Positions 3,387 through 43,341 of a DNA stretch of 64,000 bases are shown in pieces. The DNA lies in NCBI RefSeq assembly GCF_046119375.1, contig NW_027362761.1, positions 1,194,802,001 through 1,194,866,000 on the forward strand, given 5' to 3'. A program made the position numbers and the translations under genes. The notes under the pieces are model-generated. The model was not told the DNA's origin and searched no databases. It saw nothing but the letters and a program-made list of their open reading frames with translations. Source of the DNA: Phyllobates terribilis (taxonomy: Eukaryota). Each line of letters opens with the position of its first letter. Position 1 is the first letter of the stretch.

Positions 3387-6300
3387 TAGAGATGAGCGGT
3401 GTTCGACTAGAACTGTTCGCCAATCTCAAATTCGAGCTGTTTTGGGCGGTGTTCGAGTTGTTCGACGAACCCGAACGATTTGCAAAAAATTCGGCTGTTC
3501 GAGGTTATGTTCGATAACTGTTCGTGCACCAAAAGCGTGTCCTGCATGTCTGGCGCTATTTAGAGCACCAATCATGCAGGGATTGTCTGCCACTCACTGT
3601 AATGCCACAGCCATGGTGGTTGTGGCATTACAGTGATTGCCCAAATCGATGGGAACAGTGCCAACAGTGAAACATGAAAAGCCGGCAATTCAGCAGCGGC
3701 ATACACCTGTACCCGACAATTTAGAACCGAAAGAATAGAGCTTCACACATAGATTAGATAGATATAAATATGTCAGCCACATATATACGAAGCACAGTGA
3801 CAGTGTTGCTTACTGTACTTGTCATTTAGCGTAAAGGATTTATCAAAAAAAATAATAGTGTTTTCATGCACTGTCTCTTTAAAAAAGCCGGCCGGCAATT
3901 CAGCAGCGGTACCCGACAATTTATAACAGACAGAATAGAGCTTCACACATAGATTAGATAGATAGAAACATGTCAGCCACATATATACGAAGTACAGTGA
4001 CAGTGTTGCTTACTGTACTTGTCATTTAGCGTAAAGGATTTATCAAAAAAAATAATAGTGTTTTCATGCACCGTCTCTTTAAAAAAGCCGGCCGGCAATT
4101 CAGCATCTGTACCCGACAATTTAGAACAGAAAGAATAGAGAATCACACATAGATTAGATAGATAGAAACATGTCAGTCACATATATATGAAGTACAGTGA
4201 TAGTGTTGGTTACTGTACTTGTCATTTAGTATTAAAATAAAGGATTTATTATTAAAAAAATTGGCGTGGGGTTCCCCTTAATTTTAGTCTCTAGCGGAGG
4301 TTAAGCAGACGGCTGGGGCAGATGTTTGAAGCCTGGGAAGGGGGTAATACCCACGGAGCTTCCCAGGCTACTAATATCAGCCCCCAGCTGAATACATAGC
4401 CTTTACTAGCTATTAAAATGGGGGACACCCCAAAAAAAATGACGTGGGGTCCCCCCTAATTTAATAGCTAGCAAAGGCTAGGCAGACAGCTGGGGGCTGA
4501 TATTAATAGCCCAGGAAGGGAGCCATGAATATTGGCCCCCTCCCAGGCTAGAAACACCAGCCGTCAGCCGCCCCAGAAATGGCGCATTCATAGGATGCGC
4601 CAATTCTGGCACTTAGCCTCGCTCTTCCACGCTGCCCTGGTGCGGTGGCAGGGGGTAATAGGGTTGGGGTTGATGTCAGCTTATAATGCCAGCTGACATC
4701 AAGCCCAGGTTAGTAATGGAGAGGCGTCTATAAGACACCCCCATTACTAACCCCATAGTCAAAGTTAAAAAAAACACAAACACCCAGAATAAAGTCCTTT
4801 AATTGAAATAAAGACACAATCCTTTAATGTTCTAAATTAAACCATACTTACTGTCACGCCCATTCCAGCTGAAGCCAACGATCTCCTGCAATAAAAGAAA
4901 AATAATAAAGCAACCTCATCCTTACCTTTCCATGGTTCCCACGACAGCTTCAGCTCTGCTACATCGAGATGACAGGCTGGACCGCAGCAGAACGCTGCCA
5001 TCCAGCCTCTCATCCCGCAGACACTGAGAAGCGCAGGCTTGCTTGCGCTGCTCAGCGTCTCTCTGTGACGACATCCAGATGAGCCGAGTTCATGTCCAAT
5101 GAACTCGGCTCACCTCATGCACGTCACTGACAGCGTGGGAAAATTCTCACGCTGAAGCGGTGAGTGCAGGAGAATTCTCCCACGCTGTCAGTGACGTGCA
5201 TAAGGTGAGCTCATGTCCAATGAACTCAGCTCACCTCCTGCACTTCACTGACAGCGTGGGAGAATTCTCCTGCACTCAGCGCTTCAGCGTGAGAATTCTC
5301 CCACGCTGAAGCGCTGAGTGCAGGAGAATTTTCCCACGCTGTCAGTGACGTGCATGAGGTGAGCCGAGTTCATTGGACATTAACTCGGCTCATCTGGATG
5401 CCCTCACAGAGAGACACTGTGGAGCGCAAGCAAGCCTGCGCTTCTCAGTGTCTGCGGGATGAGAGGCTGGATGGCAGCGTTCTGCTGCGGTCCAGCCTGT
5501 CATCTCGATGTAGCAGAGCTGAAGCTGTCATGGGAACCATGGAAAGGTAAGGATGAGGTTGCTTTATTATTTTTCTTTTATTTCAGGAGATCGTTGGCTT
5601 CAGCTGGAATGGGCGTGACGGTAAGTATGGTTTAATTTAGAACAATAAAGAATTGTGTGTTTATTTCAATTAAAGGACTTTTTTCTGGGTGTTGTGTTTT
5701 TTTTAAATACTTTACTAGAAATTCATGGTGGTCATGTCTAATATTGGCGTGACCCCATGAATTTCGGGCTTAGGGCCAGCTGATAATACCAAGCTGGCCC
5801 TAACCCCTTTATTACCCAGTGAGCCACCGCATCAGGGCCCTGGATGAGTTGGGTACAGCGCCAGAAGATGGCGCTTCTATGAACGCGCCATTTTCCGGGG
5901 TGGCTGCGGACTGCAATTTGCAGCGGGGGTGGCCCAGAAAGCTTGGGCCTCCCTGCACTGCGGATTCCAGCCCCCAGCTGCCTAGTTGTACCTGGCTGGA
6001 CACAAAAACAGGGCGAAGCCCCACGTCAATTTTCTTTAAATTATTTCATGAAATACTTAAGAAAAAAAGGGCTTCCCTATATTGTTGTGTCCGGCCAGGT
6101 ACAAATAGGCAGATGGTGGTTGGGGGCAGCCCGTTCCTGCCTGCTGTACCTGGCTGGACACAAATATAGTGCGAAGCCCCACGTCAATTTTTTTTAAATT
6201 ATTTCATGAATTTCCTGAAATAATTTAAAAAAATTGAAGTGGGGCTTCGCACTATATTTGTGTCCAGCCAGGTACAGCAGGCAGGAACGGGCTGCCCCCA

Positions 6301-9109
6301 TCCACCAGCTGCCTATTTGTACCTGGCCGGACACAACAATATAGGGAAGCCCTTTTTTTCTTAATTATTTCATGAATTTCATGAAATATTTAAAAAAAAT
6401 TGAAGTGGGGCTTCGCACTATATTTGTGTCCAGCCAGGTACAGCAGGCAGGAACGGGCTGCCCCCAACCACCAGCTGCCTATTTGTACCTGGCCGGACAC
6501 AACAATATAGGGAAGGCCTTTTTTTCTTAATTATTTCATGAATTTCATGAAATAATTAAAAAAAAGTACGTGGGGCTTCGCCCTATTTTTGTGTCCAGCC
6601 AGGTACAACTAGGCAGCTGGGGGCTGGAATCTGCAGCGCAGGGAGGCCCAAGCTTTCTGGGCCCCCCCCCCGCTACAAATTGCAGTCCGCAGCCACCCCG
6701 GAAAATGGCGCGTTCATAGAAGCGCCATCTTCTGGCGCTGTACCCAACTCATCCAGGGCCCTGGTGCGGTGGCTCACTGGGTAATAAAGGGGTTAGGGCC
6801 AGCTTGGTATTATCAGCTGGCCCCAAGCCCAAAATTCATGGGGTCACGCCAGTATTAGACATGACCGCCATGAATTTCTAGTAAAGTATTTAAAAAAAAC
6901 ACAACACCCAGAATAAAGTCCTTTAATTGAAAAAAAGACACAATTCTTTATTGTTCTAAATTAAACCATACTTACCATCACACCCATTCCAGCTGAAGCC
7001 AACGATCTCCTGCAATAAAAGAAAAATAATAAACCAACCTCATCCTTACCTTTCCATGGTTCCCACGACAGCTTCAGCTCTGCTACATCGAGATGACAGG
7101 CTGGACCGCAGCAGAACGCTGCCATCCAGTCTGTCATCCCGCAGACACTGAGAAGCGCAGGCATGCTTGCGCTCCTCACTGTCTCGCTGTGACGGCATCC
7201 AGATGAGCCGAGGTCATGTCCAATGAACTCGGCTCACCTCATGCACGTCACTGACAGCGTGGGAAAATTCTCACGCTGAAGTGCTGAGTGCAGGAGAATT
7301 CTCCCACGCTGTCAGTGATGTGCATGAGGTGAGCTCATGTCCAATGAACTCAGCTCACCTCCTGCACGTCACTGACAGCGTGGGAAAATTCTCCTGCAAT
7401 CAGCGCTTCAGCGTGAGAATTTTCCCACGCTGTCAGTGACGTGCATGAGGTGAGCCGAGTTCATTGGACATGACCTCGGCTCATCTGGATGTCGTCACAG
7501 AGAGACGCTGAGCAGCGCAAGCAAGCCTGCGCTTCTCAGTGTCTGCGGGATGAGAGGCTGGATGGCAGCGTTCTGCTGCGGTCCAGCCTGTCATCTCGAT
7601 GTAGCAGAGCTGAAGCTGTCGTGGGAACCATGGAAAGGTAAGGATGAGGTTGCTTTATTATTTTTCTTTTATTGCAGGAGATCGTTGGCTTCAGCTGGAA
7701 TGGGCGTGATGGTAAGTATGGTTTAATTTAGAACAATAAAGGATTGTGTCTTTATTTCAATTAAAGGACTTTATTCTGGGTGTTTGTGTTTTTTTTAACT
7801 TTTACTATGGGGTTAGTAATGGGGGTGTCTTATAGACGCCTCTCCATTACTAACCTGGGCTTGATGTCAGCTGGCATTATAAGCTGACATCAACCCCAAC
7901 CCTATTACCCCCTGCCACCGCACCAGGGCAGCGTGGAAGAGCGAGGCTAAGTGCCAGAATTGGCGCATCCTATGAATGCGCCATTTCTGGGGCGGCTGAC
8001 GGCTGGTGTTTCTAGCCTGGGAGGGGGCCAATATTCATGGCTCCCTTCCTGGGCTATTAATATCAGCCCCCAACTGTCTGCCTAGCCTTTGCTAGCTATT
8101 AAATTAGAGGGGACCCCACGTCATTTTTTTGGGGGGGTCCCCCATTTTAATAGCTAGTAAAGGCTATGTATTCAGCTGGGGGCTGATATTAGTAGCCTGG
8201 GAAGCTCCGTGGGTATTACCCCCTTCCCAGGCTTCAAACATCTGCCCCAGCCGTCTGCTTAACCTCCGCTAGAGACTAAAATTAAGGGGAACCCCACGCC
8301 AATTTTTTTAATAATAAATCCTTTATTTTAATACTAAATGACAAGTACAGTAACCAACACTATCACTGTACTTCATATATATGTGACTGACATGTTTCTA
8401 TCTATCTAATCTATGTGTGATGCTCTATCTTTCTGTTCTAAATTGTCGGGTACAGATGCTGAATTGCCGGCCGGCTTTTTTAAAGAGACAGTGCATGAAA
8501 ACACTATTATTTTTTTAAATAAATCCTTTACACTAAATGACAAGTACAGTAAGCAACACTATCACTGTACTTATTATATATGTGACTGACATGTTTCTAT
8601 CTATCTAATCTATGTGTGAAGCTCTATTCTTTCTGTTCTAAATTGTCGGGTACAGATGCTGAATTGCCGGCCGGCTTTTTTAAAGAGACGGTGCATGAAA
8701 ACACTAATATTTTTTTTAATAAATCCTTTACACTAAATGACAAGTGCAGTAACCAACACTGTCACTGTGCTTCTTATATGTGTGACTGACATGTTTCTAT
8801 GTATCTAATCTATGTGTGATGCTCTATTCCTTCTTGTCTAAATTGTCGGGTACCGGTGTATGCCGCTGCTGAATTTGCCGGCCGGCTTTTTTAAAGAGAG
8901 TGTCTTCTGAGCAGTTTGTCAGCTTTTGGACACCTTTGCAGGTGTTTTCTATGTGTTTCTATGTGTTTTTATTTGCCTGCCATTGGTTTTAACGGTGTTC
9001 GACGGTGTTCTAAGGTGTTCGACGAACAGTTCGACGAACAGTTCCTCGAACATCCCGGTGTTCGACGAACCGAACCGAACCCGAACACTACAGGGGTGGC
9101 TCAACACTA
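3387..9109 (+). mobile_element. Non-autonomous hAT element with foldback interior, copy 1 (5723 bp)
   Basis: Ends TAGAGATGAGC...GCTCAACACTA. Perfect 8-bp TSD CTCGGCAA at 3379-3386 and 9110-9117. GTTCG/CGAAC subterminal repeats. Strand assigned by homology of its left subterminal hairpin to the 5' end of the large hAT at 41071. Confidence 0.92.
3682..8885. repeat. ~5.2 kb nested palindrome T-P-[Q-S-Q']-[U-V-U']-[Q-S-Q']-P'-T'
   Basis: ~200-bp T units start at 3682, 3892 and 4092 and are mirrored at ~8461, 8662 and 8872. P ~4250-4800 is the inverse of ~7800-8330. Q ~4800-5100 is inverted at ~5380-5700 and the pair repeats at ~6900-7800. U ~5700-6000 is inverted at ~6600-6900. Confidence 0.9.
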
Positions 9110-9622
9110 CTCGGCAACCTTATTGAAAAGAAGAACAGAAGGAAATTGGATGGACATCATTGATCTCAGTGCTGTCATGGAAAGTCTATGCACTTGTCTA
9201 TGACAAAAGTCACTACAGAAAAATGTAGAGTTTTCTGTAAAGTGAATGTACCCAAGATGGAAATAATCACCACTTGTGCCAAGATCTCGTCTAAAATATA
9301 TGAAAGGATGTCCTTTATTTTTTTTATATATATATTTTTTTTCAATTTCGTATTGATATTTAAAATTCAAATATTTGGGAAAAAAAGAAAGTTCTAAGTG
9401 ATCTCCAAATGCAAGCCAAGCAAACAGACTACAGCAACACCATCAATGAAATACATTGCTTATGAAATGAAACATGATATAAAGAAAAAAGACTGTACAA
9501 TTCCGAACTGAAGCTATCTTTAAGCATTCAATAACAGCAGAAAATATTGCACATTCGGCAACAATTTAACCAGTATCTGTAGATGACATTTCTTATAGAA
9601 TTTAATGCTTGGTTTTCTTCAG

Positions 9623-9678
9623 ACTCGACAGGATGAATCATCTTTTGAGAAATACAACCGTTAAATTCCATCTTATAG
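9623..9678 (+). other. Candidate 56-nt internal exon of an unidentified gene
   Basis: Acceptor GGTTTTCTTCAG and donor TAG|GTGAGT. One open frame, LDRMNHLLRNTTVKFHLI. Protein not recognised; splice-like sites occur by chance. Confidence 0.3.
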
Positions 9679-10334
9679 GTGAGTTGTTCAGTTGTACAGC
9701 TGACTTTGCACCATGTATTAGAAATGTTTTTTTTTTATTAGCACTTCTCTGTTAAACTTTATTCAATCTCTGAAATGTGACCCAATGGGGGAAATTTATC
9801 AATGGTGTCAGAATGTAAATTGATGAAAAAAATTATCCAAATAGTGGAAGGTGAAAAATGGCGTTGCCTTATCATTTCTCTTGGATGGCATATACTTTAT
9901 GCAGAATAATATTTGAAGCAAGAAATAACCGTTTTAGATGTAGCAACCTTGGCCTTAAAGGGGTTGTCCAGGTGTCAGGACTGCGAATATTTTTAATGAC
10001 ATTTTGGCCATTTTTGCCCTCTTTCAAGATGGTGTCTTTTGTCTCATGTGCCCCTTGTCTTCCTGCTTTATAACTCCACCCCAGCCTCTAATCAGTGCTA
10101 GAGTATTCTGCCTGTGACCTGTTCTTGGTGGTTTCCTAGTTTCCTGCTCTGCCCTGCAGACTTGTGTGGATCTTCTGTTACCTGCTCCCAGAGATTCTGC
10201 TGCATTCAGTTGTTACCTGTAATCCTCCTTCTCCTGGCTGCTCCTGCTGCTACCTCTGAGCCTCAGTCTTCACCTGCATTCTGCTAACAAGTAAGCTGGT
10301 TTCTGCTCTGACTCACCTGCATTAGATAGCTGCA

Positions 10335-10691
10335 GAGCACGGGACTGTGCTGCACTATCAGGGACTTCCTACCCAGGCGTCCCTGGATTATCTAATATAT
10401 ATATTGTATGGACTTCCTTGCATGGACTTGCTAGAGACTTCCTTGTTTTCTAGCATCCTCTAGTGTGAACTGTGCTTTACTGATTGCTTTGCTGATTGCA
10501 TTTAGAGCATGGGACTGTGCTACATTATCTGGGACTTCCTACCCAGACCTCCCTGGATTATCTAATATATATTGTTTGGACTTCCTTGCATCTATATATA
10601 TATTTGAATATGGACTTGATAAAGACTTCTTTGTTTTCTAACATCCGCTAGTGTGAACTGCGCTTTACAAACTGCTCTGCTGATTGCATTT
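10335..10691. repeat. Tandem duplication (~170-190 bp) in an LTR-like pyrimidine-rich segment (~10070-10830)
   Basis: AGAGCA(C/T)GGGACTGTGCT...GGGACTTCCTACCCAG...CTAGTGTGAACTG...GCTGATTGCATTT occurs twice (~10335-10503 and ~10503-10691). No termini or TSD found. Confidence 0.6.
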
Positions 10692-11318
10692 TCCCCTGAG
10701 TTGTTTATGGACTTTGTGTTTTCATCTGCACTTGTTTGAAACACCGTGTGTTTTTAATATACACTATAATATACACTTTGACACCTATAAGCTGTGTTCT
10801 GTTGTATCTTTGTTCCACGCAAAAAGACTCCTGTGGTATCCATTATAATTATTTCACCAGGTTAGGGATGAAAGCCTTGAAGACTGTAGACTTGTGAATC
10901 CTCACAACGTGAATTGTCAGGATTTTCTAGTCCCGGCCACGAGAGCGGATGGTCATGTGCTAGTAAATATCTGATTTTGCATACTTGACATCACTTGACC
11001 ACCCGCTCTCATCGCTGGCAACAGAGAACTCTGACAGTGCGCACGCTTTGAGGATTACCAAGTCTTCAGTCACAGGCTTCAAGGGTTTTTAGGTAGTTTT
11101 TTTGTGTGAAATAGTTTTAAATTTTGCCGCATACCTTTTATTCCACCAACATTTTTATTTATTTATTTGTTTTGCAGTTTAACGCCCCCTTGTCACTTTT
11201 AAGAATTGGATGTCATCTGGGAGGAACTAGCTATGCAAATAGGGTTTAAGCTACATTTATTAATTCCAACTTTTTAAAAAGTTGCACAAAAAGTAACAAA
11301 GTAAAAAGTGGGAAACTA

Positions 11319-13254: not shown

Positions 13255-13835
13255 CCTCTATCCTATAGAGTGTAAGCTCTTATGATCAGCAGGATCCTCT
13301 CTCCTGTAGAGTGTAAGCTCTTATAGTCAGCGGGATCCTCTCTCCTGTAGAGTGTAAGCTCTTATAGTCAGCGGGATCCTCTCTTTCTCTCTCCTGTAGA
13401 GTGTAAGCTCTTATAGTCAGCAGGATCCTCTCTCTCTCTCTCCTGTAGAGTGTAAGCTATTAAAGTCAGGGGAGACCTCTCTCTTTCCTGTAGAGCGTAA
13501 GCTCTTATGGTCAGCAGGGTTATCTTTCTCCTGTAGAGCGTAAGCTCTTATGGTTGGCAGGGTCCTCTTTCTCTCTCTCCTGTAGAGTGTAAGCTCTTAT
13601 GGTCAGTGGGGTCTTCTCTCTTCCGTAGAGTGTAAGCTCCTGTGGTCAGCAAGGTCCTCCCTCTCTCTCTCCTGTAGAGCGTAAGCTCTTTTAGTTAGCG
13701 TTTTTTTATTCTCTCCTGTAGAATCCAAGCTTTTGTTGTCAGCACGTTCCCTCTTTGTAGAGACTTTTGATCAGCAAGGTCTTCTCTCTTCTGTAGAGTG
13801 TAAGCTCTTATGGTCAGTGGGGTCCTCTCTCTCCT
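13255..13835. repeat. ~40-48 bp minisatellite
   Basis: Roughly a dozen units of CTCCTGTAGAGTGTAAGCTCTTATGGTCAGCAGGGTCCT(CT)n. Confidence 0.9.
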
Positions 13836-18083: not shown

Positions 18084-18135
18084 TATCTATATAAATGACC
18101 CACCCTGTATAGAGTTATAGAGGTGTGATCACAGA

Positions 18136-18557: not shown

Positions 18558-18568
18558 ACCAAAGGTCA

Positions 18569-19139: not shown

Positions 19140-19159
19140 GTACCCCCCTTCCTCTACGA

Positions 19160-19388: not shown

Positions 19389-22300
19389 TAGTGTTGAGCC
19401 ACCCCCTTAGTGTTCGGGTTCGGTTCGGTTCGTCGAACACCGGGATGTTCGAGGAACTGTTCGTCGAACACTTTAGAACACCGTCGAACACCGTTAAAAC
19501 CAATGGCAGGCAAACAAAAACACATAGAAACACATAGAAAACACCTTCATAGGTGTCCAAAAGCTGACAAACTGCTCAGAAGACGCTTTCTTTAAAAAAG
19601 CCGGCCGGCAATTCAGCAGCGGCATACACCGGTACCCGACAATTTAGACAAGAAGGAATAGAGCATCACACATAGATTAGATAGATAGAAACATGTCAGT
19701 CACATATATATGAAGTACAGTGACAGTGTTGCTTACTGTACTTGTCATTTAGTGTAAAGGATTTATTAAAAAAAATAATAGTGTTTTCATGCACAGTCTC
19801 TTTAAAAAAGCCGGCCGGCAATTCTGCATCTGTACCCGACAATTTATAACAGACAGAATAGAGCTTCACACATAGATTAGATAGATAGAAACATGTCAGT
19901 CACATATATATGAAGTACAGTGATAGTGTTGGTTACTGTACTTGTCATTTAGTATTAAAATAAAGGATTTATAATTAAAAAAAATTGGCGTGGGGTTCCC
20001 CTTAATTTTAGGCTCTAGCGGAGGTTAAGCAGACAGCTGGGGCAGATGTTTGAAGCCTGGGAAGGGGGTAATACCCACGGAGCTTCCCAGGCTACTAATA
20101 TGAGCCCCCAGCTGAATACATAGCCTTTACTAGCTATTAAAATGGGGGACCCCCCCAAAAAATGACGTGGGGTCCCCCCTAATTTAATAGCTAGCAAAGG
20201 CTAGGCAGACAGCTGGGGGCTGATATTAATAGCCCAGGAAGGGAGCCATGAATATTGGCCCCCTCCCAGGCTAGAAACGGCAGCCGTCAGCCGCCCCAGA
20301 AATGGCGCATTCATAGGATGCGCCAATTCTGGCACTTAGCCTCGCTCTTCCACGCTGCCCTGTAGCGGTGGCAGGGGGTAATAGGGCTGGGGTTGATGTC
20401 AGCTTATAATGCCAGCTGACATCAAGCCCAGGTTAGTAATGGAGAGGCGTCTATAAGACACCCCCATTACTAACCCCATAGTCAAAGTTAAAAGAAAACA
20501 CAAACACCCAGAATAAAGTCCTTTAATTGAAATAAAGACACAATCCTTTATTGTTCTAAATTAAACCATACTTACCATCACGCCCATTCCAGCTGAAGCC
20601 AACGATCTCCTGCAATAAAAGAAAAATAATAAAGCAACATCATCCTTACCTTTCCATGGTTCCCACGACAGCTTCAGCTCTGCTACATCGAGATGACAGG
20701 CTGGACCGCAGCAGAACGCTGCCATCCAGCCTGTCATCCCGCAGACACTGAGAAGCGCAGGCATGCTTGCGCTCTGCAGTGTCTGGCTGTGACGGCATAA
20801 AGATGAGACGAGTTCATGTCCAATGAACTCGGCGCACCTCATGCACGTCACTGACAGCGTGGGAAAATTCTCACGCTGAAGCGCTGAGTGCAGGAGAATT
20901 CTCCCACGCTGTCAGTGACGTGCATGAGGTGAGCTCTTGTCCAATGAACTCAGCTCACCTCCTGCACGTCACTGACAGCGTGGGAGAATTCTCCTGCACT
21001 CAGCGCTTCAGCGTGAGAATTCTCCCACGCTGAAGCGCTGAGTGCAGGAGAATTTTCCCACGCTGTCAGTGACGTGCATAAGGTGAGCTCATGTCCAATG
21101 AACTCAGCTCACCTCCTGCACGTCACTGACAGCGTGGGAGAATTCTCCTGCACTCAGCGCTTCAGTGTGAGAATTCTCTCACGCTGAAGCGCTGAGTGCA
21201 GGAGAATTTTCCCACGCTGTCAGTGACGTGCATGAGGTGAGCAGAGTTCATTGGACATTAACTCGGCTCATCTGGATGCCCTCACAGAGAGACACTGTGG
21301 AGCGCAAGCAAGCCTGCGCTTCTCAGTGTCTGCGGGATGACAGGCTGGATGGCAGAGTTCTGCTGCGGTCCAGCCTGTCATCTCGATGTAGCAGAGCTGA
21401 AGCTGTCATGGGAACCATGGAAAGGTAAGGATGATGTTGCTTTATTATTTTTCTTTTATTTCAGGAGATCGTTGGCTTCAGCTGGAATGGGCGTGACGGT
21501 AAGTATGGTTTAATTTAGAACAATAAAGAATTGTGTGTTTATTTCAATTAAAGGACTTTTTTCTGGGTGTTGTGTTTTTTTTAAATACTTTACTAGAAAT
21601 TCATGGCGGTCATGTCTAATATTGGCGTGACCCCATGAATTTTGGGCTTAGGGCCAGCTGATAATGCCAAGCTGGCCCTAACCCCTTTATTACCCAGTGA
21701 GCCACCGCATCAGGGCCCTGGATGAGTTGGGTACAGCGCCAGAAGATGGCGCTTCTATGAACGCGCCATTTTCCGGGGTGGCTGCGGACTGCAATTTGCA
21801 GCGGGGGTGGCCCAGAAAGCTTGGGCCTCCCTGCGCTGCGGATTACAGCCCCCAGCTGCCTAGTTGTACCTGGCTGGACACAAAAACAGGGCGAAGCCCC
21901 ACGTCAATTTTCTTTAAATTATTTCATGAAATAATTAAGAAAAAAAGGGCTTCCCTATATTGTTGTGTCCGGCCAGGTACAAATAGGCAGCTGGTGGTTG
22001 GGGGCAGTCCGTTCCTGCCTGCTGCACCTGACTGGACACAAATATAGTGCGAAGCCCCACGTCAATTTTTTTTTAATTATTTCATGAATTTCCTGAAATA
22101 ATTTTAAAAAATTGAAGTGGGGCTTCGCACTATATTTGTGTCCAGCCAGGTACAGCAGGCAGGAACGGGCTGCCCCCAACCACCAGCTGCCTATTTGTAC
22201 CTGGCCGGACACAACAATATAGAGAAGGCCTTTTTTTCTTAATTATTCCATGAATTTCATGAAATAATTAAAAAAAATTGAAGTGGGGCTTCGCACTATA

Positions 22301-24896
22301 TTTGTGTCCAGCCAGGTACAGCAGGCAGGAACGGGCTGCCCCCAACCACCAGCTGACTATTTGTACCTGGCCGGACACAACAATATAGGAAAGGCCTTTT
22401 TTTCTTAATTATTTCATGAATTTCATGAAATAATTAAAAAAAATTGAAGTGGGGCTTCGCACTATATTTGTGTCCAGCCAGGTGCAGAAGGCAGGAACGG
22501 GCTTCCCCCAACCACCAGCTGCCTATTTGTACCTGGCCGGACACAACAATATAGGGAAGGCCTTTTTTTCTTAATTATTTCATGAATTTCATGAAATAAT
22601 TAAAAAAAAAATACGTGGGGCTTCACCCTATTTTTGTGTCCAGCCAGGTACAACTAGGCAGCTGGGGGCTGGAATCTGCAGCGCAGGGAGGCCCAAGCTT
22701 TCCGGGCCCCCCCCGCTGCAAATTGCAGTCCGCAGCCACCCCGGAAAATGGCGCGTTCATAGAAGCGCCATCTTCTGGCGCTGTACCCAACTCATCCAGG
22801 GCTCTGGTGCGGTGGCTCACTGGGTAATAAAGGGGTTAGGGCCAGCTTGGTATTATCAGCTGGCACCAAGCCCAAAATTCATGGGGTCACGCCAATATTA
22901 GACATGACCGCCATGAATTTCTAGTAAAGTATTTAAAAAAAACACAACACCCAGAAAAAAGTCCTTTAATTGAAATAAACACACAATTCTTTATTGTTCT
23001 AAATTAAACCATACTTACCGTCACGCCCATTCCAGCTGAAGCGAACGATCTCCTGCAATAAAAGAAAAATAATAAACCAACCTCATCCTTACCTTTCCAT
23101 GGTTCCCAAGACAGCTTCAGCTCTGCTACATCGAGATGACAGGCTGGACCGCAGCAGAACGCTGCCATCCAGCCTGTCATGCCGCAGACACTGAGAAGAG
23201 CAGGCATGCTTGCGCTCCTCAGTGTCTCGCTGTGACGGCATCCAGATGAGCCGAGGTCATGTCCAATGAACTCAGCTCACCTCATGCACCTCACTGACAG
23301 CGTGGGAAAATTCTCCTGTACTCAGCGCTTCAGCGTGAGAATTCTCCCACGCTGTAAGTGACGTGCATGAGGTGAGCCGAGTTCATTGGACATGACCTCG
23401 GCTCATCTTTATGCCGTCACAGAGAGACAATGTGGAGCGCAAGCATGCCTGCGCTTCTCAGTGTCTGCGGGATGACAGGCTGGATGGCAGCGTTCTGCAG
23501 GTCCAGCCTGTCATCTCGATGTAGCAGAGCTGAAGCTGTCGTGGGAACCATGGAAAGGTAAGGATGAGGTTGCTTTATTATTATATTTTTATTACAGGAG
23601 ATCGTTGGCTTCAGCTGGAATGGGCGTGATGGTAAGTATGGTTTAATTTAGAACAATAAAGAATTGTGTCTTTATTTCAATTAAAGGACTTTATTCTGGG
23701 TGTTTGTGTTTTTTTTAACTTTGACTATGGGGTTAGTAATGGGGGTGTCTTATAGACGCCTCTCCATTACTAACCTGGGCTTGATGTCAGCTGGCATTAT
23801 AAGCTGACATCAACCCCAGCCCTATTACCCCCTGCCACCGCACCAGGGCAGCGTGGAAGAGCGAGGCTAAGTGCCAGAATTGGCGCATCCTATGAATGCG
23901 CCATTTCTGGGGCGGCTGACGGCTGGTGTTTCTAGCCTGGGAGGGGGCCAATATTCATGGCTCCCTTCCTGGGCTATTAATATCAGCCCCCAGCTGTCTG
24001 CCTAGCCTTTGCTAGCTATTAAATTAGGGGGGACCCCACGTCATTTTTTTGGGGGGGGTCCCCCATTTTAATAGCTAGTAAAGGCTATGTATTCAGCTGG
24101 GGGCTGATATTAGTAGCCTGGGAAGCTCCGTGGGTATTACCCCCTTCCCAGGCTTCAAACATCTGCCCCAGCTGTCTGCTTAACCTCCGCTAGAGCCTAA
24201 AATTAAGGGAACCCCACGCCAATTTTTTTAATAATAAATCCTTTATTTTAATACTAAATGACAAGTACAGTAACCAACACTGTCACTGTACTTCATATAT
24301 ATGTGACTAACATGTTTCTATCTATCTAATCTATGTGTGAAGCTCTATTCTGTCTGTTATAAATTGTCGGGTACCTCTGCTGAATTGCCGGCCGGCTTTT
24401 TTAAAGAGACGGTGCATGAAAACACTATTATTTTTTTTGATAAATCCTTTACGCTAAATGACAAGTACAGTAAGCAGCACTTTCACTGTACTTCGTATAT
24501 ATGTGGCTGACATGTTTATATCTATCTAATCTATGTGTGAAGCTCTATTCTTTCGGTTCTAAATTGTCGGGTACCGGTGTATGCCGCTGCTGAATTGCCG
24601 GCTTTTCATGTTTCACTGTTGGCACTGTTCCCATCGATTTGGGCAATCACTGTAATGCCACAACCACCATGGCTGTGGCATTACAGTGAGTGGCAGACAA
24701 TCCCTGCATGATTGGTGCTCTAAATAGCACCAGACATGCAGGACACGCTTTTGGTGCATGAACAGTTATCGAACATAACCTCGAACAGCCGAATTTTTTG
24801 CAAATCGTTCGGGTTCGTCGAACAACTCGAACACCGCCCAAAACAGCTCGAATTTGAGATTGGCGAACAGTTCTAGTCGAACACCGCTCATCTCTA
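19389..24896 (-). mobile_element. Foldback hAT element, copy 2 (5508 bp), inverted relative to copy 1
   Basis: TAGTGTTGAGCC at 19389 and CGCTCATCTCTA ending 24896. TSD ATCAAGAG (19381-88) / CTCAAGAG (24897-904), 7/8 match. Same nested interior as copy 1. Confidence 0.92.
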
Positions 24897-24904
24897 CTCA
24901 AGAG

Positions 24905-25583
24905 ATTCCACATACTTATAGAGTAAGGACTTATGGAACACATTGAGGACCTTAAGGGCCTAAGAAAGTTTAAGACAAAATGCTGCTGGGTTAATGACGG
25001 CGGTTAATTTATAGGGACCAATAAACCTAGGTCTCAGCTTTCAAGAAGGAACTTTCAATCTTATATTCCTGGTAGACAACCAAACAAAGTCATTCACATT
25101 AAGGTCTGGACCTGGCAACCATTTTCTGTCAGCCATACGTTTATACCTGTCTCCCATGATCTTTAAATGAATTAATCGAAAACAGAATGCCTTCCAGAAC
25201 TTGGAAACAAATTGGGTTCCTCGATCTGACACCACATCGGAGGTAACCCCGTGAAGCTTCACAATCTCATTTATGAACACCTTCACAAGTTTCTTGGCAT
25301 TTGGAAGTGCAGATAGTGCGACGACGTGAATCATTTTACTGAATCTACAACCACCAAAACCACCATTTTGCCTGCAAAAACCAGTAGGTCAGTAATAAAA
25401 TCCATGGACAAGTGTGTCCATGGTCTACTAGGGATAGGTAGTGAAAGAAGAGTACCAGATGGACAGATATGCAAACCTTAGAACGCGCGCAAATACTACA
25501 AGTAGCTACGTGTTCAATCACATCCCGATGCAACCCTGGCCACTAAAAACGATGAGAAAGGAGATCCGCGGTTGCCTTACCAC
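24905..25583 (-). pseudogene. Gypsy integrase core and zinc finger, internally deleted
   Basis: [18 protein letters not shown] (HHCC region), VVSDRGTQFVSKFWKAFC joined directly to DRYKRMADRK...VWLSTRNIRLKVPS, then a GP(Y/F) motif. Confidence 0.87.
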
Positions 25584-28500
25584 TAGAGATGAGCGGTGTT
25601 CGACTAGAACTGTTCGCCAATCTCAAATTCGAGCTGTTTTGGGTGGTGTTCGAGTTGTTCGACGAACCTGAACGATTTGCAAAAAATTCGGCTGTTCGAG
25701 GTTATGTTCGATAACTGTTCGTGCACCAAAAGCATGTCCTGCATGTCTGGCACTATTTAGAGCACCAATCATGCAGGGATTGCCTGCCACTCACTGTAAT
25801 GCCACAGCCATGGTGGTTGTGGCATTACAGTGATTGCCCAAATCGATGGGAACAGTGCTCACAGTGAAACATGAAAAGCCGGCAATTCATCAGCGGCATA
25901 CACAGGTACCCGACAATTTAGAACCGAAAGAATAGAGCTTCACACATAGATTAGATAGATAGAAACATGTCAGTCACACATATAAGAAGCACAGTGACAG
26001 TGTTGCTTACTGTACTTGTCATTTAGTGTAAAGGATTTATCAAAAAAAATAATAGTGTTTTCATGCACCGTCTCTTTAAAAAAGCCGGCTGGCAATTCAG
26101 CATCTGTACCCGACAATTTAGAATAGAAGGAATAGAGAATCACAAATAGATTAGATAGATAGAAACATGTCAGCCACATATATACGAAGTACAGTGACAG
26201 TGTTGCTTACTGTACTTGTCATTTAGTGTAAAGGATTTATTAAAAAATATAATAGTGTTTTCGTGCACCGTCTCTTTAAAAAAGCCGGCCGGCAATTCAG
26301 CAGCGGTACCCGACAATTTATAACAGACAGAATAGAGCTTCACACATAGATTAGATAGATAGAAACATGTCAGTCACATATATATGAAGTACTGTGACAG
26401 TGTTGCTTACTGTACTTGTCATTTACTGCAAAGGATTTATTAAAAAAAATAATAGTGTTTTCATGCACCGTCTCTTTAAAAATCCGGCCGGCAATTCAGC
26501 ATCTGTACCCGACAATTTATAACAGAAAGAATAGAGAATCACACATAGATTAGGTAGATAGAAACATGTCAGTCACATATATATGAAGTACTGTGACAGT
26601 GTTGCTTACTGTACTTGTCATTTACTGCAAAGGATTTATTAAAAAAAATATTAGTGTTTTCGTGCACCGTCTATTTAAAAAAGCCGGCCGGCAATTCAGC
26701 ATCTGTACCCGAAAATTTATAACAGACAGAATAGAGCTTCAAACATAGATTAGATAGATAGAAACATGTCAGTCACATATATAAGAAGTACAGTGACAGT
26801 GTTGGTTACTGTACTTGTCATTTAGTATTAAAATAAAGGATTTATTATTAAAAAAAATTGGCGTGGGGTTCCCGTAATTTTAGTCTCTAGCGGAGGTTAA
26901 GCAGACAGCTGGGGCAGATGTTTGAAGCCTGGGAAGGGGGTAATACCCACGGAGCTTCCCAGGCTACTAATATCAGCCCCCAGCTGAATACCTAGCCTTT
27001 ACTAGCTATTAAAATGGAGGAACCCCCCAAAAAATGACGTGGGGTCCCCCCTAATTTAAAAGCTAGCAAAGGCTAGGCAGACAGCTGGGGGCTGATATTA
27101 ATAGCCCAGGAAGGGAGCCATGAATATTGGCCCCCTCCCAGGCTAGAAACACCAGCCGTCAGCCGCCGCAGAAATGGCGCATCCATAGGATGCGCCAATT
27201 CTGGCACTTAGCCTCGCTCTTCCACGCTGCCCTGGTGCGGTGGCAGGGGGTAATAGGGTTGGGGTTGATGTCAGCTTATAATGCCAGCTGACATCAAGCC
27301 CAGGTTAGTAATGGAGAGGCGTCTATAACACCCCCCCATTACTAACCCAATAGTCAAAGTTAAAAGAAAACGCAAACACCCAGAATAAAGTCCTTTAATT
27401 GAAATAAAGACACATTCCATTATTGTTCTAAATTAAACCATACTTACCGTCACGCCCATTCCAGCTGAAGCCAACGATCTCCTGCAATAAAAGAAAAATA
27501 ATAAAGCAACCTCATCCTTACCTTTCCATGGTTCCCACGACAGCTTCAGCTCTGCTACATTGAGATAACAGGCTGGACCGCAGCAGAACGCTGCCATCCA
27601 GCCTGTCATCCCGCAGACACTGAGAAGCGCAGGCATGCTTGCGCTCTGCAGTGTCTGGCTGTGACGGCATCCAGATGAGCCGAGTTCATGTCCAATGAAC
27701 TCGGCTCACCTCATGCACGTCACTGACAGCGTGGGAAAATTCTCACGCTGAAGCGGTGAGTGTAGGAGAATTCTCCCACGCTGTCAGTGACGTGCATGAG
27801 GTGAGCTCATGTCCAATGAACTCGGCTCACCTCATGCACGTCACTGACAGCGTGGGAGAATTCACCTGCACTCAGCACTTCAGCGTGAGAATTCTCCCAC
27901 GCTGTCAGTGACGTGCATGAGGTCAGCTGAGTTCATTGGACATGAATGAGCTCACCTCATGCACGTCACTGACAGCGTGGGAGAATTCTCACGCTGTAGC
28001 GCTGAGTGCAGGATAATTTTCCCACGCTGTCAGTGACGTGCATGAGGTGAGCTGAGATCATTGGACATGAATGAGCTCATTTCATGCACGTCACTGACAG
28101 CGTGGGAAAATTCTCCTGCACTCAGCGCTTCAGCGTGAGAATTTTCCCACGCTGTCAGTGACGTGCATGAGGTGAGCTCATTCATGTCCAATGAACTCAG
28201 CTGACCTCATGTACGTCACTGACAGCGTGGGAGAATTTTCACGCTGAAGTGCTGAGTGCAGGAGAATTCTCCCACGCTGTCAGTGAAGTGCATGAGGTGC
28301 GCCGAGTTCATTGGACATGAGCTTGTCTCATCTTTATGCCGTCACAGCGAGACACTGAGGAGCGCAAGCATGCCTGCGCTTCTCAGTGTCCGCGGGATGA
28401 CAGGCTGGATGGCAGCGTTCTGCTGCGGTCCAGCCTGTCATCTCGATGTAGCAGAGCTGAAGCTGTCGTGGGAACCATGGAAAGGTAAGGATGAGGTTGC

Positions 28501-31500
28501 TTAATTATTTTACTTTTATTGCAGAAGACATTGGCTTCAGCTGGAATGGGCGTGACGGTAAGTATGGTTTAATTTAGAACAATAAAGAATTGTGTGTTTA
28601 TTTCAATTAAAGGACTTTATTCTGGGTGTTGTGTTTTTTTAAATACTTTACTAGAAATTCATGGTGGTCATGTCTAATATTGGCGTGACCCCATGAATTT
28701 CGGGCTTAGGGCCAGCTGATAATGCCAAGCTGGCCTTAACCCCTTTATTACCCAGTGAGCCACCGCACCAGGGCCCTGGATGAGTTGGGTACAGCGCCAG
28801 AAGATGGCGCTTCTATGAACGCGCCATTTTCTGGGGCGGCTGCGGACTGCAATTTGCAGCGGGTGGGGCCCAGAAAGCTTGGGCCTCCTTGCGCTGCGGA
28901 TTCCAGCTCCCAGCTGCCTAGTTGTACCTGGCTGGGCACAAAAATAGGGAGAAGCCCCACACATTTTTTTTTTAAATTATTTCATGAAATTCATGGAATA
29001 ATTAAGAAAAAAAGGGCTTCCCTATATTGTTGTGTCCAACCAGGTACAAATAGGCAGCTGGTGGTTGGGGGCAGCCCGTCCCTGCCTGCTGTACCTGGCT
29101 GGACACAAATATAGTGCGAAGCCCCACGTCAATTTTTTTTTAATTATTTCATGAAATAATTTTTTTAAAAAAGGGCTTCCCTATATTGTTGTGTCTGGCC
29201 AGGTACAAATAGGCAGCTGGTGGTTGGGGGCAGCCCGTTCCTGCCTGCTGTAAATGACTGGACACAAATATAGGGCGAAGCCCCACGTCAATTTTTTTAA
29301 AATTATTTCAGGAAATTCATGAAATAATGAAAAAAAAATTGATGTGGGGCTTCGCCCTATATTTGTGTCCAGCCAGGTACAGCAGGCAGGAACGGGTTGC
29401 TCCCAACCACCAGCTGCCTATTTGTACCTAGCCGGACACAACAATATAGGGAAGCCCTTTTTTTCTTAATTATTTCATGAATTTCATGAATTTAAAAAAA
29501 AAATACGTGGAGCTTCGCCCTATTTTTGTGTCCAGCCAGGTACAACTAGGCAGCTGGGGGCTGGAATCTGCAGCGCAGGGAGGCCCAAGCTTTCTGGGCC
29601 CCACCCGCTGCAAATTGCAGTCCGCAGCCGCCCCGGAAAATGGCGCGTTCATAGAAGCGCCATCTTCTGGCGCTGTACCCAACTCATCCAGGGCCCTGGT
29701 GCGGTGGCTCACTGGGTAATAAAGGGGTTAAGGCCAGCTTGGCATTATCAGCTGGCCCTAAGCCCGAAATTCATGGGGTCACGCCAATATTAGACATGAC
29801 CACCATGAATTTCTAGTAAAGTATTTAAAAAAAACACAAACACCCAGAAAAAAGTCCTTTAATTGAAATAAACACACAATTCTTTATTGTTCTAAATTAA
29901 ACCATACTTACCGCCACGCCCATTCCAGCTGAAGCCAATGATCTCCTGCAATAAAAGTAAAATAATAAAGCAACATCATCCTTACCTTTCCATGGCTCCC
30001 ACGACAGCTTCAGCTCTGCTACATCGAGATGACAGGCTGGACCGCAGCAGAACGCTGCCATCCAGCCTGTCATCCCGCAGACACTGAGAAGCGCAGACTT
30101 GCTTGCGCTACTCAGTGTCTGGCTGTGACGGCATCCAGATGAGCCGAGGTCATGTCCAATGAACTCGGCTCACCTCATGCACGTCACTGACAGCGTGGGA
30201 AAATTCTCACGCTGAAGCGCTGAGTGCAGGAGAATTTTCCCACGCTGTCAGTGACGTACATGAGGTGAGCCGAGTTCATTGTCGGCTCATCTGGATGCCG
30301 TCACAGTCAGACACTGAGGAGCGCAAGCATGCCTGCGCTTCTCAGTGTCTGCGGGATGACAGGCTGGATGGCAGCGTTCTGCTGCGGTCCAGCCTGTCAT
30401 CTCGATGTAGCAGAGCTGAAGCTGTCCTGGGAACCATGGAAAGGTAAGGATGAGGTTGCTTTATTATTTTTCTTTTATTGCAGGAGATCGTTGGCTTCAG
30501 CTGGAATGGGCGTGATGGTAAGTATGGTTTAATTTAGAACAATAAAGAATTGTGTCTTTATTTCAATTAAAGGACTTTATTCTGGGTGTTTGTGTTTTTT
30601 TTTTTACTTTGACTATGGGGTTTGTAATGGGGGTGTCTTATAGACGCCTCTCCATTACTAACCTGGGCTTGATGTCAGCTGGCATTATAAGCTGACATCA
30701 ACCCCAACCCTATTACCCCCTGCCACCGCACCAGGGCAGCGTGGAAGAGCGAGGCTAAGTGCCAGAATTGGCGCATCCTATGGATGCGCCATTTCTGGGG
30801 CGGCTGACGGCTGGTGTTTCTAGCCTGGGAGGGGGCCAATATTCATGGCTCCCTTCCTGGGCTATTAATATCAGCCCCCAGCTGTCTGCCTAGCCTTTGC
30901 TAGCTATTAAATTAGGGGGGACCCCACGTCATTTTTTTGGGGGGGGTCCTCCATTTTAATAGCTAGTAAAGGCTAGGTATTCAGCTGGGGGCTGATATTA
31001 GTAGCCTGGGAAGCTCCGTGGGTATTACCCCCTTCCCAGGCTTCAAACATCTGCCCCAGCTGTCTGCTTAACCTCCGCTAGAGACTAAAATTACGGGGAA
31101 CCCCACGCCAATTTTTTTTAATAATAAATCCTTTATTTTAATACGAAATGACAAGTACAGCAACCAACACTGTCACTGTACTTCTTATATATGTGACTGA
31201 CATGTTTCTATCTATCTAATCTATGTGTGAAGCTCTATTCTGTCTGTTATAAATTGTCGGGTACAGATGCTGAATTGCCGGCCGGCTTTTTTAAAGAGAC
31301 GGTGCATGAAAACACTATTATTTTTTTTAATAAATCCTTTGCAGTAAATGACAAGTACAGTAAGCAACACTGTCACAGTACTTCATATATATGTGACTGA
31401 CATGTTTCTATCTATCTAATCTATGTGTGAAGCTCTATTCTGTCTGTTATAAATTGTCGGGTACCGCTGCTGAATTGCCGGCCGGCTTTTTTAAAGAGAC

Positions 31501-32518
31501 GGTGCACGAAAACACTATTATATTTTTTAATAAATATTTTACACTAAATGACAAGTACAGTAAGCAACACTGTCACTGTACTTCGTATATATGTGGCTGA
31601 CATATTTCTATCTATCTAATCTATGTGTGATTCTCTATTCCTTCTATTCTAAATTGTCGGGTACAGATGCTGAATTGCCGGCCTGCTTTTTTAAAGAGAC
31701 GGTGCATGAAAACACTATTATTTTTTTTAATAAATCCTTTACACTAAATGACAAGTACAGTAAGCAACACTGTCACTGTACTTCGTATATATGTGGCTGA
31801 CATGTTTCTATCTATCTAATCTATGTGTGATTCTCTATTCTTTCTGTTATAAATTGTCGGGTACCGCTGCTGAATTGCCGGCGGCTTTTTTAAAGAGACG
31901 GTGCATGAAAACACTATTATTTTTTTTAATAAATCCTTTTCAGTAAATGACAAGTACAGTAAGCAACACTATCACTTTACTTATTATATATGTGACTGAC
32001 ATGTTTCTATCTATCTAATCTATGTGTGAATCTCTATTCTGTCTGTTATAAATTGTCGGGTACCGCTGCTGAATTGCCGGCCGGCTTTTTTAAAGAGACG
32101 GTGCACGAAAACACTATTATATTTTTTAATAAATCCTTTACACTAAATGACAAGTACAGTAAGCAACACTGTCACTGTACTTCATATATATGTGACTGAC
32201 ATGTTTCTATCTATCTAATCTATGTGTGATGCTCTATTCCTTCATGTCTAAATTGTCGGGTACCGGTGTATGCCGCTGCTGAATTGCCGGCCGGCTTTTT
32301 TAAAGAAAGCGTCTTCTGAGCAGTTTGTCAGCTTTTGGACACCTTTGAAGGTGTTTTCTATGTGTTCCTATGTGTTTTTGTTTGCCTGCCATTGGTTTTA
32401 ACGGTGTTCGACGGTGTTCTAAGGTGTTCGACGAACAGTTCGACGAACAGTTCCTCGAACATCCCGGTGTTCGACGAACCGAACCGAACCCGAACACTAC
32501 GGGGGTGGCTCAACACTA
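25584..32518 (+). mobile_element. Foldback hAT element, copy 3 (6935 bp)
   Basis: TAGAGATGAGCG at 25584 and GCTCAACACTA ending 32518. Perfect TSD CTTACCAC at 25576-83 and 32519-26. Inserted in the integrase GHPG|GKAT motif. Confidence 0.93.
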
Positions 32519-43260: not shown

Positions 43261-43341
43261 CCTCTTCCACGGTTCTAATCTACTCTTTATTACCCTTTTT
43301 CCATTGATAGTGCAAGTGTAAGCTATTTTACTTCATTTACA

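What the first reader, a model, noticed from the sequence alone, without database searches (positions are those of the whole stretch)
3387..32518. Each foldback hAT copy carries its own private substitutions mirrored on both arms, 4-5 kb apart
Seen: copy 1 has G4311/C8252 (GCAGACGGCT versus ACAGCT in the other copies). Copy 2 has G20012/C24196 (TAGGCTC versus TAGTCTC). Copy 3 has G26874/C31094, C26992/G30976, A27018/T30950 and C27183/G30783 in the outer arms (coordinate sums 57966-57968), and C28837/G29630 plus TTAACCCC/GGGGTTAA in the inner U arms. Independent decay after insertion would not give paired variants. Inference: one arm is copied from the other, by gene conversion, hairpin/cruciform repair or fold-back synthesis, either in place or in each master lineage. 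This would be a self-homogenising, foldback-like hAT derivative. I do not know of a description of it, but I cannot search.
Basis: partly seen in the sequence, partly recalled or inferred. Interest (0 to 1): 0.8.

Follow-up and report, generated by a model that had tools for sequence, protein, structure and literature searches.

The report
Partly self-matching arms in frog hAT palindromes
Three non-coding hAT transposon copies, each a 5-6 kb palindrome, carry matching variants on both arms in one roughly 1-kb tract, but these are inherited subfamily markers made by arm-to-arm recombination in the source lineages, a process already known for other long inverted repeats.

Summary
In the outer arms, 15 two-arm variant sites pair the two arms of one copy and only 3 pair any other arms (p about 1e-8). 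Most are non-CpG transversions.

The pattern is regional, though. The outermost 200-bp unit of the arms groups by side. A 580-bp tract, X, groups by copy. The inner arms of copies 1 and 2 group crosswise because the centre is inverted between them.

The variants are not private. One copy-2 variant is read in 35-47% of family depth. Words carrying copy 1's variant cluster occur in at least six samples and in four other species labels.

Copy 1 has an exact empty site in other individuals, yet its arms differ by 1-7%. So transposition does not reset the arms, and copy 1 inherited its mirrored set.

Best reading: patchy gene conversion plus crossover (flip) between arms in propagating lineages of a very abundant, recently mobile non-autonomous hAT family. 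In-place conversion is unsupported. The scan's first readers have noted other copies of this family elsewhere in the genome.

The parts
3387..9109 (+). Copy 1: non-autonomous hAT-like element, 5723 bp. Its 8-bp target duplication CTCGGCAA lies at 3379-3386 and 9110-9117.
   Evidence: Ends TAGAGATGAGCGG... and ...GGCTCAACACTA, with a perfect target duplication. No ORF of 120 aa or more. Exact empty site 3378|9110 in contigs of runs X1 and X3.
19389..24896 (-). Copy 2: same family, inverted in the window, 5508 bp. Target duplication ATCAAGAG/CTCAAGAG (7 of 8 match).
25584..32518 (+). Copy 3: same family, 6935 bp. Target duplication CTTACCAC/CTTACCAC.
3681..5308 (+). Copy 1 left outer arm (200-bp array T, tract X, module B). 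Pairs with 7255-8882.
   Evidence: 1630-nt inverted match at 96.4%
7255..8882 (-). Copy 1 right outer arm.
4187..4766 (+). Tract X, copy 1 left arm. Its mirror is 7797-8376. This is the zone where arms group by copy. The equivalents are 23717-24296 and 19910-20489 in copy 2, and 26783-27362 and 30607-31186 in copy 3.
   Evidence: Site patterns in X: 8 mirrored, 0 other pairs, 18 singletons. Tree and AU test. Left and right arms of copy 1 are 99.2% identical here.
3709..4229 (+). 200-bp tandem array T, copy 1 left arm (mirror 8333-8853). In copy 3 the arrays are 25906-26826 and 31146-32265.
   Evidence: TRF. Unit counts are 3/3, 2/2 and 5/6 for copies 1, 2 and 3. The outermost unit groups by side and the innermost by copy. 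Copy 3 left units 2-3 match right units 4-5 with 2 and 0 differences.
5325..7272 (+). Copy 1 centre: inner arms 5324-5932 and 6664-7272 around a 166-bp array at 6188-6616. It is inverted relative to the ends when compared with copy 2 (21203-23315) and copy 3 (28262-30208).
   Evidence: Copy 1 centre against copy 2 in element orientation: 97.7% on the minus strand, 87.6-90.4% on the plus strand. Against copy 3: 94.0% minus, 91.5% plus. Clades L1+R2 100/100 and R1+L2 100/99.
5009..5071 (+). Cluster of five copy-1 mirrored variants in module B (mirror 7492-7554).
   Evidence: Words from 4979-5101, each carrying at least one of these variants, are held at 0.9-1.0 by runs of several samples and at 0.6-1.0 by four other organism labels.
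41071..52506 (+). Separate, larger hAT element with a nearly identical terminal tip. It supports the superfamily assignment but is not part of the palindromic copies.
   Evidence: Target duplication CTCATTAC on both sides and inverted ends TAGTGTTGAGCGA. Broken reading frames with zf-BED (E 7e-9) and the hAT dimerisation domain (E 2e-10). A 101-nt subterminal match at 87% to copy 1.
63448..63660 (-). Right end (about 210 bp, 87.6% to copy 1) of a related element without the palindrome. It runs off the window.
   Evidence: The sequence upstream of the shared end equals the common loose-end consensus at 8900 in the laid contigs.

Best explanation
The three elements are copies of a very abundant, recently mobile, non-autonomous hAT-type transposon. 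Between ordinary asymmetric ends (about 294 and 227 bp) it carries a palindrome of palindromes.

The two arms of an element recombine with each other from time to time. Non-crossover events copy a patch of a few hundred to about a thousand bases from one arm to the other. A variant then ends up on both arms. Crossover events invert everything between the exchange points, giving two orientation isomers of the centre.

These events happened in lineages that went on transposing. Each daughter copy therefore inherits its source's set of mirrored variants, together with its source's arm-to-arm differences.

Shown here:
- hAT-type ends and target duplications
- by-copy grouping in tract X
- by-side grouping at the outer edge of the arms
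- crosswise grouping and inversion of the centre
- an empty site for copy 1
- wide distribution of two 'private' variant sets

Inferred:
- that the transfer is homologous recombination between arms
- that it occurs mainly before insertion
For: - Mirrored sites: 15 against 3 other pair patterns, p 1.4e-8. By events 10 of 13, p 1.6e-5. Most are non-CpG.
- Zone trees: X groups by copy and by-side is rejected at p 0.0002. Module B groups by copy in copy 1 only (95/96). The outermost unit groups by side (95/94), with by-copy rejected at p 0.001-0.014. Inner arms give L1+R2 and R1+L2 at 100.
- Each copy has a 0.7-1.1 kb tract with 1.2-1.4% left-right mismatch, flanked by 4-7%. This is the shape of a conversion tract.
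- The centre is inverted in copy 1 relative to copies 2 and 3, which is the crossover product.
- Copy 1 has an exact empty site with one target copy in X1 and X3, and its flanks are unique in the window.
- The copy-2 variant at alignment column 479 is read at 35-47% of family depth.
- Words of copy 1's variant cluster are held by many samples and by other species labels.
Against: - Only three copies could be read, so lineage history is inferred from six arms.
- The read evidence comes from Logan contigs, not raw long reads. Its table of other letters was truncated by overload, so only two variant sets could be tested for frequency.
- The word search shows that each word exists elsewhere. It does not show that the whole five-site haplotype is linked there, or that it sits on both arms there.
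- The empty site could in principle be a precise loss of a long palindrome between its 8-bp direct repeats, rather than the ancestral state.
- It is unexplained why conversion should favour tract X and spare the inner arms of copies 1 and 2.
Confidence: 0.6

Rival explanations
1. In-place conversion. After insertion, the arms of each resident copy convert each other, so mirrored variants arise at the locus itself.
For: The same recombination that acts in source copies should also act on resident copies. For copies 2 and 3 there is no evidence on age or frequency. Copy 3 has near-identical array blocks on both arms, with 0 and 2 differences per 120 nt, which looks recent.
Against: Copy 1 is absent from its site in other individuals, yet it carries 6 mirrored sites and 1-7% arm divergence. 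The two tested variant sets are family-wide and one is cross-species, so they were not made at these loci.
Confidence: 0.15
2. Copying coupled to transposition or gap repair. After excision, repair synthesis from the sister copy switches template between the arms (fold-back synthesis). Part of one arm is rebuilt from the other each time a new copy is made.
For: Structural features are mirrored as well as point variants. Array unit counts are 3/3, 2/2 and 5/6. Loose ends of other family variants are mirrored at 4652 and 7911. Long tracts and variable architectures in other copies (notes s1-196791, s1-238367, s1-196866, s1-225815) would fit template switching.
Against: It cannot act on whole arms. 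The outermost unit keeps side-specific markers in all three copies, and the inner arms of copies 1 and 2 kept about 5% divergence through their split. Copy 1 looks young but its arms are not identical. The unit-count match has only three data points (permutation p = 1/6). Inversion of the centre is explained more simply by crossover.
Confidence: 0.12
3. Exchange between different elements of the huge family, not between arms, shuffled subfamily modules. The mirrored state is a by-product.
For: Relationships are mosaic. The left end has 2 differences between copies 1 and 2 but 7-9 to copy 3, while the right end is closest between copies 2 and 3. Module B of copy 2's right arm is nearest to copy 3's left arm.
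Against: Free assortment of variants among arms predicts cross-copy pairs as often per pair class as same-copy pairs. Observed: 15 sites in 3 same-copy classes against 3 sites in 12 other classes.
Confidence: 0.08
4. Assembly or polishing artefact that copied variants between the two arms.
For: Inverted repeats of 95-99% identity are hard for short-read polishing. Raw reads could not be inspected, because only contigs were served.
Against: Arms keep many one-arm differences (59 singletons in 1.1 kb). Zones group by side or crosswise in a coherent way across three loci. Tested variant words exist in independent samples and species. Collapse would erase differences, not create zone-specific phylogeny.
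Confidence: 0.03

Closest known systems
Galileo (P superfamily, Drosophila) and other foldback-like transposons with long internally repetitive inverted repeats, such as Tetris
   Same: These are DNA transposons with kilobase inverted repeats that contain tandem sub-repeats and show strong structural dynamism. The authors report 98-100% identity between the two inverted repeats of a copy and propose recombination and conversion between them (PMC3573991). In Tetris, the repeats of one element group together in two of three complete copies (PMC4079207).
   Different: Here the superfamily is hAT (8-bp target duplication). The palindrome is internal, between unique asymmetric ends, rather than forming the termini. 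Arm identity is only 94.6-96.4% overall. Homogenisation is confined to one tract. Orientation isomers of the centre are seen.
Large genomic palindromes with arm-to-arm gene conversion (primate sex-chromosome palindromes)
   Same: Inverted duplicates separated by a spacer, in which variants are transferred between arms so that arms evolve in concert. Spacer inversion by arm crossover is also known there (my own knowledge; PMC8327919 and PMC3403216 were listed but not read in detail).
   Different: Those are single-locus structures of tens to thousands of kb with more than 99.9% arm identity. Here the palindrome is a mobile 5-6 kb unit present in very many copies, and conversion is weak and patchy.
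Flip-flop inversion isomers of molecules with large inverted repeats (plastid genomes)
   Same: Two orientations of the segment between inverted repeats, produced by recombination within the repeats (PMC7145664, listed; mechanism from my own knowledge).
   Different: In plastids both isomers coexist within a cell at equal frequency. Here the two isomers are seen in different chromosomal copies. Whether a given locus still flips is unknown.
FEDoR, a non-autonomous dispersed element of the frog Rana temporaria (PMC12054243)
   Same: An amphibian non-coding element with target duplications, internal tandem arrays and paired forward/reverse inverted repeats on both sides of the arrays. It has a short hAT-like similarity in its flank.
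   Different: FEDoR is about 3.5 kb, with 22-bp monomer arrays and 91- and 49-bp inverted repeats. The elements here have 200-, 166- and about 121-bp units and kilobase arms. No sequence comparison was possible, so identity is not claimed.

Membership tests
hAT superfamily, non-autonomous derivative | 8-bp target site duplication | tested here: met
   CTCGGCAA/CTCGGCAA, CTTACCAC/CTTACCAC and ATCAAGAG/CTCAAGAG
hAT superfamily, non-autonomous derivative | Short terminal inverted repeats beginning YARNG, with subterminal short repeats | tested here: met
   TAGAGATGAGC against TAGTGTTGAGC, 9 of 11 matching. Many GTTCGAC/GAACAG-type motifs in the first and last 150 bp or so. The right-end tip matches 11 of 12 with the ends of a bona fide hAT at 41071-52506.
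hAT superfamily, non-autonomous derivative | Transposase with BED finger, DDE core and hAT dimerisation domain (absent from non-autonomous members) | tested here: not met
   There is no ORF of 120 aa or more in any of the three copies, as expected for non-autonomous copies. The mobilising transposase was not identified. The neighbouring hAT has different subterminal motifs and broken frames.
hAT superfamily, non-autonomous derivative | Evidence of mobility (empty site) | tested here: met
   Contigs in X1 and X3 join 3378 to 9110 with no mismatch and a single copy of the target.
Foldback (FB) elements in the strict sense | The long inverted repeats themselves form the element termini | tested here: not met
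   The palindrome starts about 294 bp from the left end and about 227 bp from the right end. The two terminal regions are unrelated apart from short motifs.
Palindrome evolving in concert by arm-to-arm conversion | The arms of one copy are each other's closest relatives | tested here: inconclusive
   Met in tract X for all three copies, in module B for copy 1 and in the inner arms for copy 3. Rejected in the outermost unit for all copies and in the inner arms for copies 1 and 2.
Palindrome evolving in concert by arm-to-arm conversion | Arm identity clearly higher than identity between copies | tested here: not met
   Whole arms are 96.4, 96.1 and 94.6% identical, against 95-97% between copies. 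Only in X is it 98.6-99.2% against 97-98.7%.
Inversion isomerism through inverted-repeat crossover | Both orientations of the central segment relative to fixed ends | tested here: met

The most novel reading that the evidence does not exclude
The palindromic structure is actively maintained because it matters for propagation. Arm copying would then be coupled to the making of new copies, for example hairpin-templated or template-switching repair synthesis. That would symmetrise both point variants and array lengths, and would help explain how a 5-7 kb non-coding hAT derivative reached an enormous copy number in a frog genome while still inserting today.
Probability: 0.12. Interest if true: 0.7.

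Novelty: new member of a known kind. Interest (0 to 1): 0.38.

Why it matters
This is a clean small case in which one mobile element shows three histories side by side along its arms: no exchange, conversion, and crossover with inversion. At least one copy is still polymorphic for presence.

For annotators the practical point concerns dating. Arm-to-arm identity of such elements cannot be used as an insertion clock the way LTR identity is. The arms are neither identical at insertion nor independent afterwards.

For transposon biology, it adds a vertebrate hAT example to the idea, proposed for Galileo, that long inverted repeats attract recombination and generate new subfamilies. A family this abundant would allow rates of intra-element conversion and inversion to be measured genome-wide.

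It does not reveal a new kind of mechanism.

Tried and rejected
- **Parallel CpG mutation** as the source of mirrored sites. Rejected: 12 of 15 sites are outside CpG and 9 are transversions. The cross-copy pair classes, which control for hot spots, hold only 3 sites.
- **Coding capacity.** There are no ORFs of 120 aa or more in the elements.
- **Structured RNA.** No Rfam family reaches threshold anywhere in the window.
- **Literal search for the terminal sequence in papers.** It gave only unrelated primer hits.
- **Variant frequencies from read laying for every mirrored site.** The table of other letters was truncated because too much was laid. Absence of a row there was not used. Only position 4664 was informative.
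- **Copy number from depth.** Summed contig depth is about 1e5-1e6, against 5-11 for the empty-site contigs. The tool warns that this is not a copy number, so I say only 'very abundant'.
- **Mirrored array length as independent proof.** With three copies the best possible permutation p is 1/6, so it is only consistent with the explanation.
- **Identity with FEDoR of Rana temporaria.** The architecture is loosely similar, but the repeat units differ and no sequence was available.
- **More family copies.** No searchable collection holds this genome. Only two short related fragments lie elsewhere in the window.
Full report
**What is there**

The stretch holds three copies of one element:
- copy 1, window 3387-9109, plus strand
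- copy 2, 19389-24896, inverted
- copy 3, 25584-32518, plus strand

Each begins TAGAGATGAGCGG and ends GGCTCAACACTA. Each is flanked by an 8-bp target duplication, two of them perfect and one matching at 7 of 8. None has an ORF of 120 aa or more, and no Rfam family matches. The first 150 bp or so and the last 150 bp or so are full of short GTTCGAC/GAACAG-type motifs.

The same window holds a bona fide hAT at 41071-52506. It has a perfect target duplication CTCATTAC and ends TAGTGTTGAGCGA. Its broken frames carry a BED finger and the hAT dimerisation domain. Its terminal tip matches the right end of the three copies at 11 of 12 positions, and a 101-nt subterminal piece is shared at 87%. The hAT assignment is therefore well founded, and the three copies are non-autonomous.

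**Architecture**

Between unique, unrelated ends (about 294 bp left, about 227 bp right) lies a palindrome of palindromes. In order it contains:
- a 200-bp tandem array (T)
- a unique tract (X, about 0.55 kb)
- a module B followed at once by its inverted copy
- a short tract
- a central 166-bp array
- the mirror image of all of this

Whole outer arms are 96.4, 96.1 and 94.6% identical within copies 1, 2 and 3. That is no better than arms of different copies, which are 95-97% identical.

**Check of the observation**

I aligned the six arms over 1.1 kb (X plus B) and classified the variable sites:
- 15 sites are shared only by the two arms of one copy (6, 4 and 5 for copies 1, 2 and 3).
- 3 sites are shared by some other pair of arms.
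- 0 sites separate left arms from right arms.
- 59 sites are single-arm.

Three of the 15 possible pair classes are same-copy. On that basis 15 of 18 gives p = 1.4e-8. Merging clustered sites into events gives 10 of 13, p = 1.6e-5. In X alone the count is 8 of 8. Twelve of the 15 sites are outside CpG and nine are transversions. The mirrored variants are real and not chance.

**The pattern is regional**

Trees and AU tests per zone give four different answers:

| Zone | Grouping | Support |
|---|---|---|
| Outermost 200-bp unit of the arms | By side (left arms against right arms) | 95/94; by-copy rejected at p 0.001-0.014; 5 side-specific and 0 mirrored sites |
| Tract X | By copy | 99/97, 85/87, 76/76; by-side rejected at p 0.0002 |
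| Module B | By copy in copy 1 only | 95/96; the two outer B modules of copy 1 differ at 4 of 384 positions, against 14-19 in the other copies |
| Inner arms | Crosswise for copies 1 and 2 (L1+R2, R1+L2); by copy for copy 3 | 100/100 and 100/99; copy 3 at 86/88 |

In the inner arms, copy 1's left arm is 98.3% identical to copy 2's right arm. It is only 94.7% identical to its own partner.

Along each copy, left-right mismatch is 1.2-1.4% in a 0.7-1.1 kb tract centred on X. It is 4-7% on both sides of that tract.

In the T arrays, the outermost unit follows side and the innermost unit follows copy. Copy 3 has two consecutive units on the left arm that are nearly identical to two units on the right arm, offset by two units.

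**Inversion isomers**

In element orientation, the centre of copy 1 matches copy 2 at 97.7% on the opposite strand, against 87.6-90.4% on the same strand. It matches copy 3 at 94.0% against 91.5%. The TRF consensus of the central array shows the same thing.

Copy 1 is therefore one isomer, and copies 2 and 3 are the other. The switch from 'by side' to 'crosswise' lies somewhere in the homogenised T-X-B tract. This is the product expected of a crossover between the arms.

**Are the variants private, and did they arise in place?**

Contigs of four public DNA runs of the same species label were laid on copy 1.

In two runs (X1, X3) a contig joins 3378 directly to 9110, with no mismatch over 79 + 91 nt and a single copy of the target octamer. 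That is an exact empty site. The flanks are not repeated in the window.

Copy 1 is thus an insertion polymorphism and presumably young. Yet its arms differ by about 1% in X, about 7% in T and about 5% in the inner arms. It follows that arms are not made identical at transposition. Copy 1's arm differences and its mirrored set came from its source.

Position 4664, where copy 2 has its mirrored C (alignment column 479), is read as C in 35-47% of the family depth in all four runs.

I then searched a 123-nt stretch (4979-5101) in which every 31-mer contains at least one of copy 1's five clustered mirrored variants. Its sampled words are held as follows:
- 0.9-1.0 by runs from samples S1, S2, S3, S21 and S19 of the same species label
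- 0.7 by S5
- 0.6-1.0 by runs labelled as four other organisms

Both variant sets that could be tested are therefore subfamily markers, one of them older than species splits.

**Mechanism**

The simplest account is homologous recombination between the two arms of an element in lineages that keep transposing.
- Non-crossover outcomes copy a patch from one arm to the other. They give mirrored variants, by-copy grouping and the low-divergence tract.
- Crossover outcomes invert the centre.
- The edge of the homology (the outermost unit) escapes. This is usual for conversion between duplicates (my own knowledge).

Daughter copies inherit the state of their source. The shown and inferred steps are separated in the Best explanation section.

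I cannot say why X is favoured, or why the inner arms of the lineage of copies 1 and 2 escaped.

**Rivals**

- In-place conversion cannot be excluded for copies 2 and 3, but it is unsupported where it could be tested.
- Fold-back synthesis that rebuilds whole arms at each jump is contradicted by the side-specific outer unit, by the old inner-arm divergence shared in trans by copies 1 and 2, and by young copy 1. Partial template switching during gap repair remains possible. It would also fit the mirrored array lengths (3/3, 2/2 and 5/6 units) and the mirrored loose ends of other family variants at 4652 and 7911.
- Free exchange among different elements is rejected as the sole cause by the 15:3 split.
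- An assembly artefact is unlikely given the coherent zone-specific phylogeny at three loci and the presence of the variant words in independent samples. Raw spanning reads were not available, however.

**Comparison with what is known**

Conversion and recombination between the long inverted repeats of one element were proposed for Galileo, where the repeats of a copy are 98-100% identical (PMC3573991). Within-element grouping of repeats was noted for Tetris (PMC4079207). Arm-to-arm conversion in large palindromes and flip-flop isomers of inverted-repeat molecules are textbook cases.

What is particular here:
- the hAT superfamily and a vertebrate (frog, per note s1-224807) host
- a palindrome that is internal rather than terminal
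- weak, tract-limited homogenisation
- both orientation isomers
- evidence of current mobility

I rate it a new member of a known kind.

The scan's first readers have noted other copies of this foldback-like hAT family on other pieces of the genome (s1-196791, s1-238367, s1-196866, s1-225815) and the architecture on this window (s1-218027). Those notes were not used as evidence.

Noticed in passing
window 41071-52506: An 11.4-kb hAT element with a perfect 8-bp target duplication (CTCATTAC) and inverted ends TAGTGTTGAGCGA. Its frame-broken transposase pieces include zf-BED at 43402-45195 and the hAT dimerisation domain at 46393-46671. Internal tandem arrays lie at 41810-43322 and 46888-47650. 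A Tc1/mariner-type HTH ORF sits nested at 50397-51044.
   Followed up: partly
window 9109/3387 junction, seen in laid contigs (table 5c): Contigs in three runs read right end, then 8 bases (CTCATAAG), then left end of the family. Their depth is 213-940, against 5-11 for single-copy contigs. This is a head-to-tail pair sharing one 8-bp target that is itself multi-copy, and it may be a composite unit. Note s1-224807 describes a tail-to-tail double insertion of a frog hAT elsewhere.
   Followed up: no
window 63448-64000 (minus strand): The right end of a related element shares the last 210 bp or so (87.6%) with the palindromic family but has a different interior. That interior sequence is the commonest loose end at 8900 in the laid contigs. 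The palindromic family therefore seems to be a derivative of a more abundant plain family. The element runs off the window.
   Followed up: partly
window 3534, 4652, 7911, 8900 (loose ends): Many family contigs leave the copy-1 sequence at these points. The loose ends at 4652 and 7911 are reverse complements of each other. Another abundant variant therefore carries the inner palindrome inside different, again mirrored, flanks.
   Followed up: no
window 52961-55096 (minus strand): A 711-aa ORF with endonuclease and reverse transcriptase domains (LINE-type), just outside the large hAT. A GDSL-lipase-like ORF lies at 55353-56336.
   Followed up: no
six-arm alignment of 4187-5308 and equivalents: Single-arm differences are mostly transversions (27 against 12 transitions), which is unusual for point mutation. 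Many 'singletons' may be imported by exchange with diverged paralogous modules rather than being new mutations.
   Followed up: no
window 13256-13835: A degenerate 49-bp tandem array of about 13 units, between copies 1 and 2.
   Followed up: no
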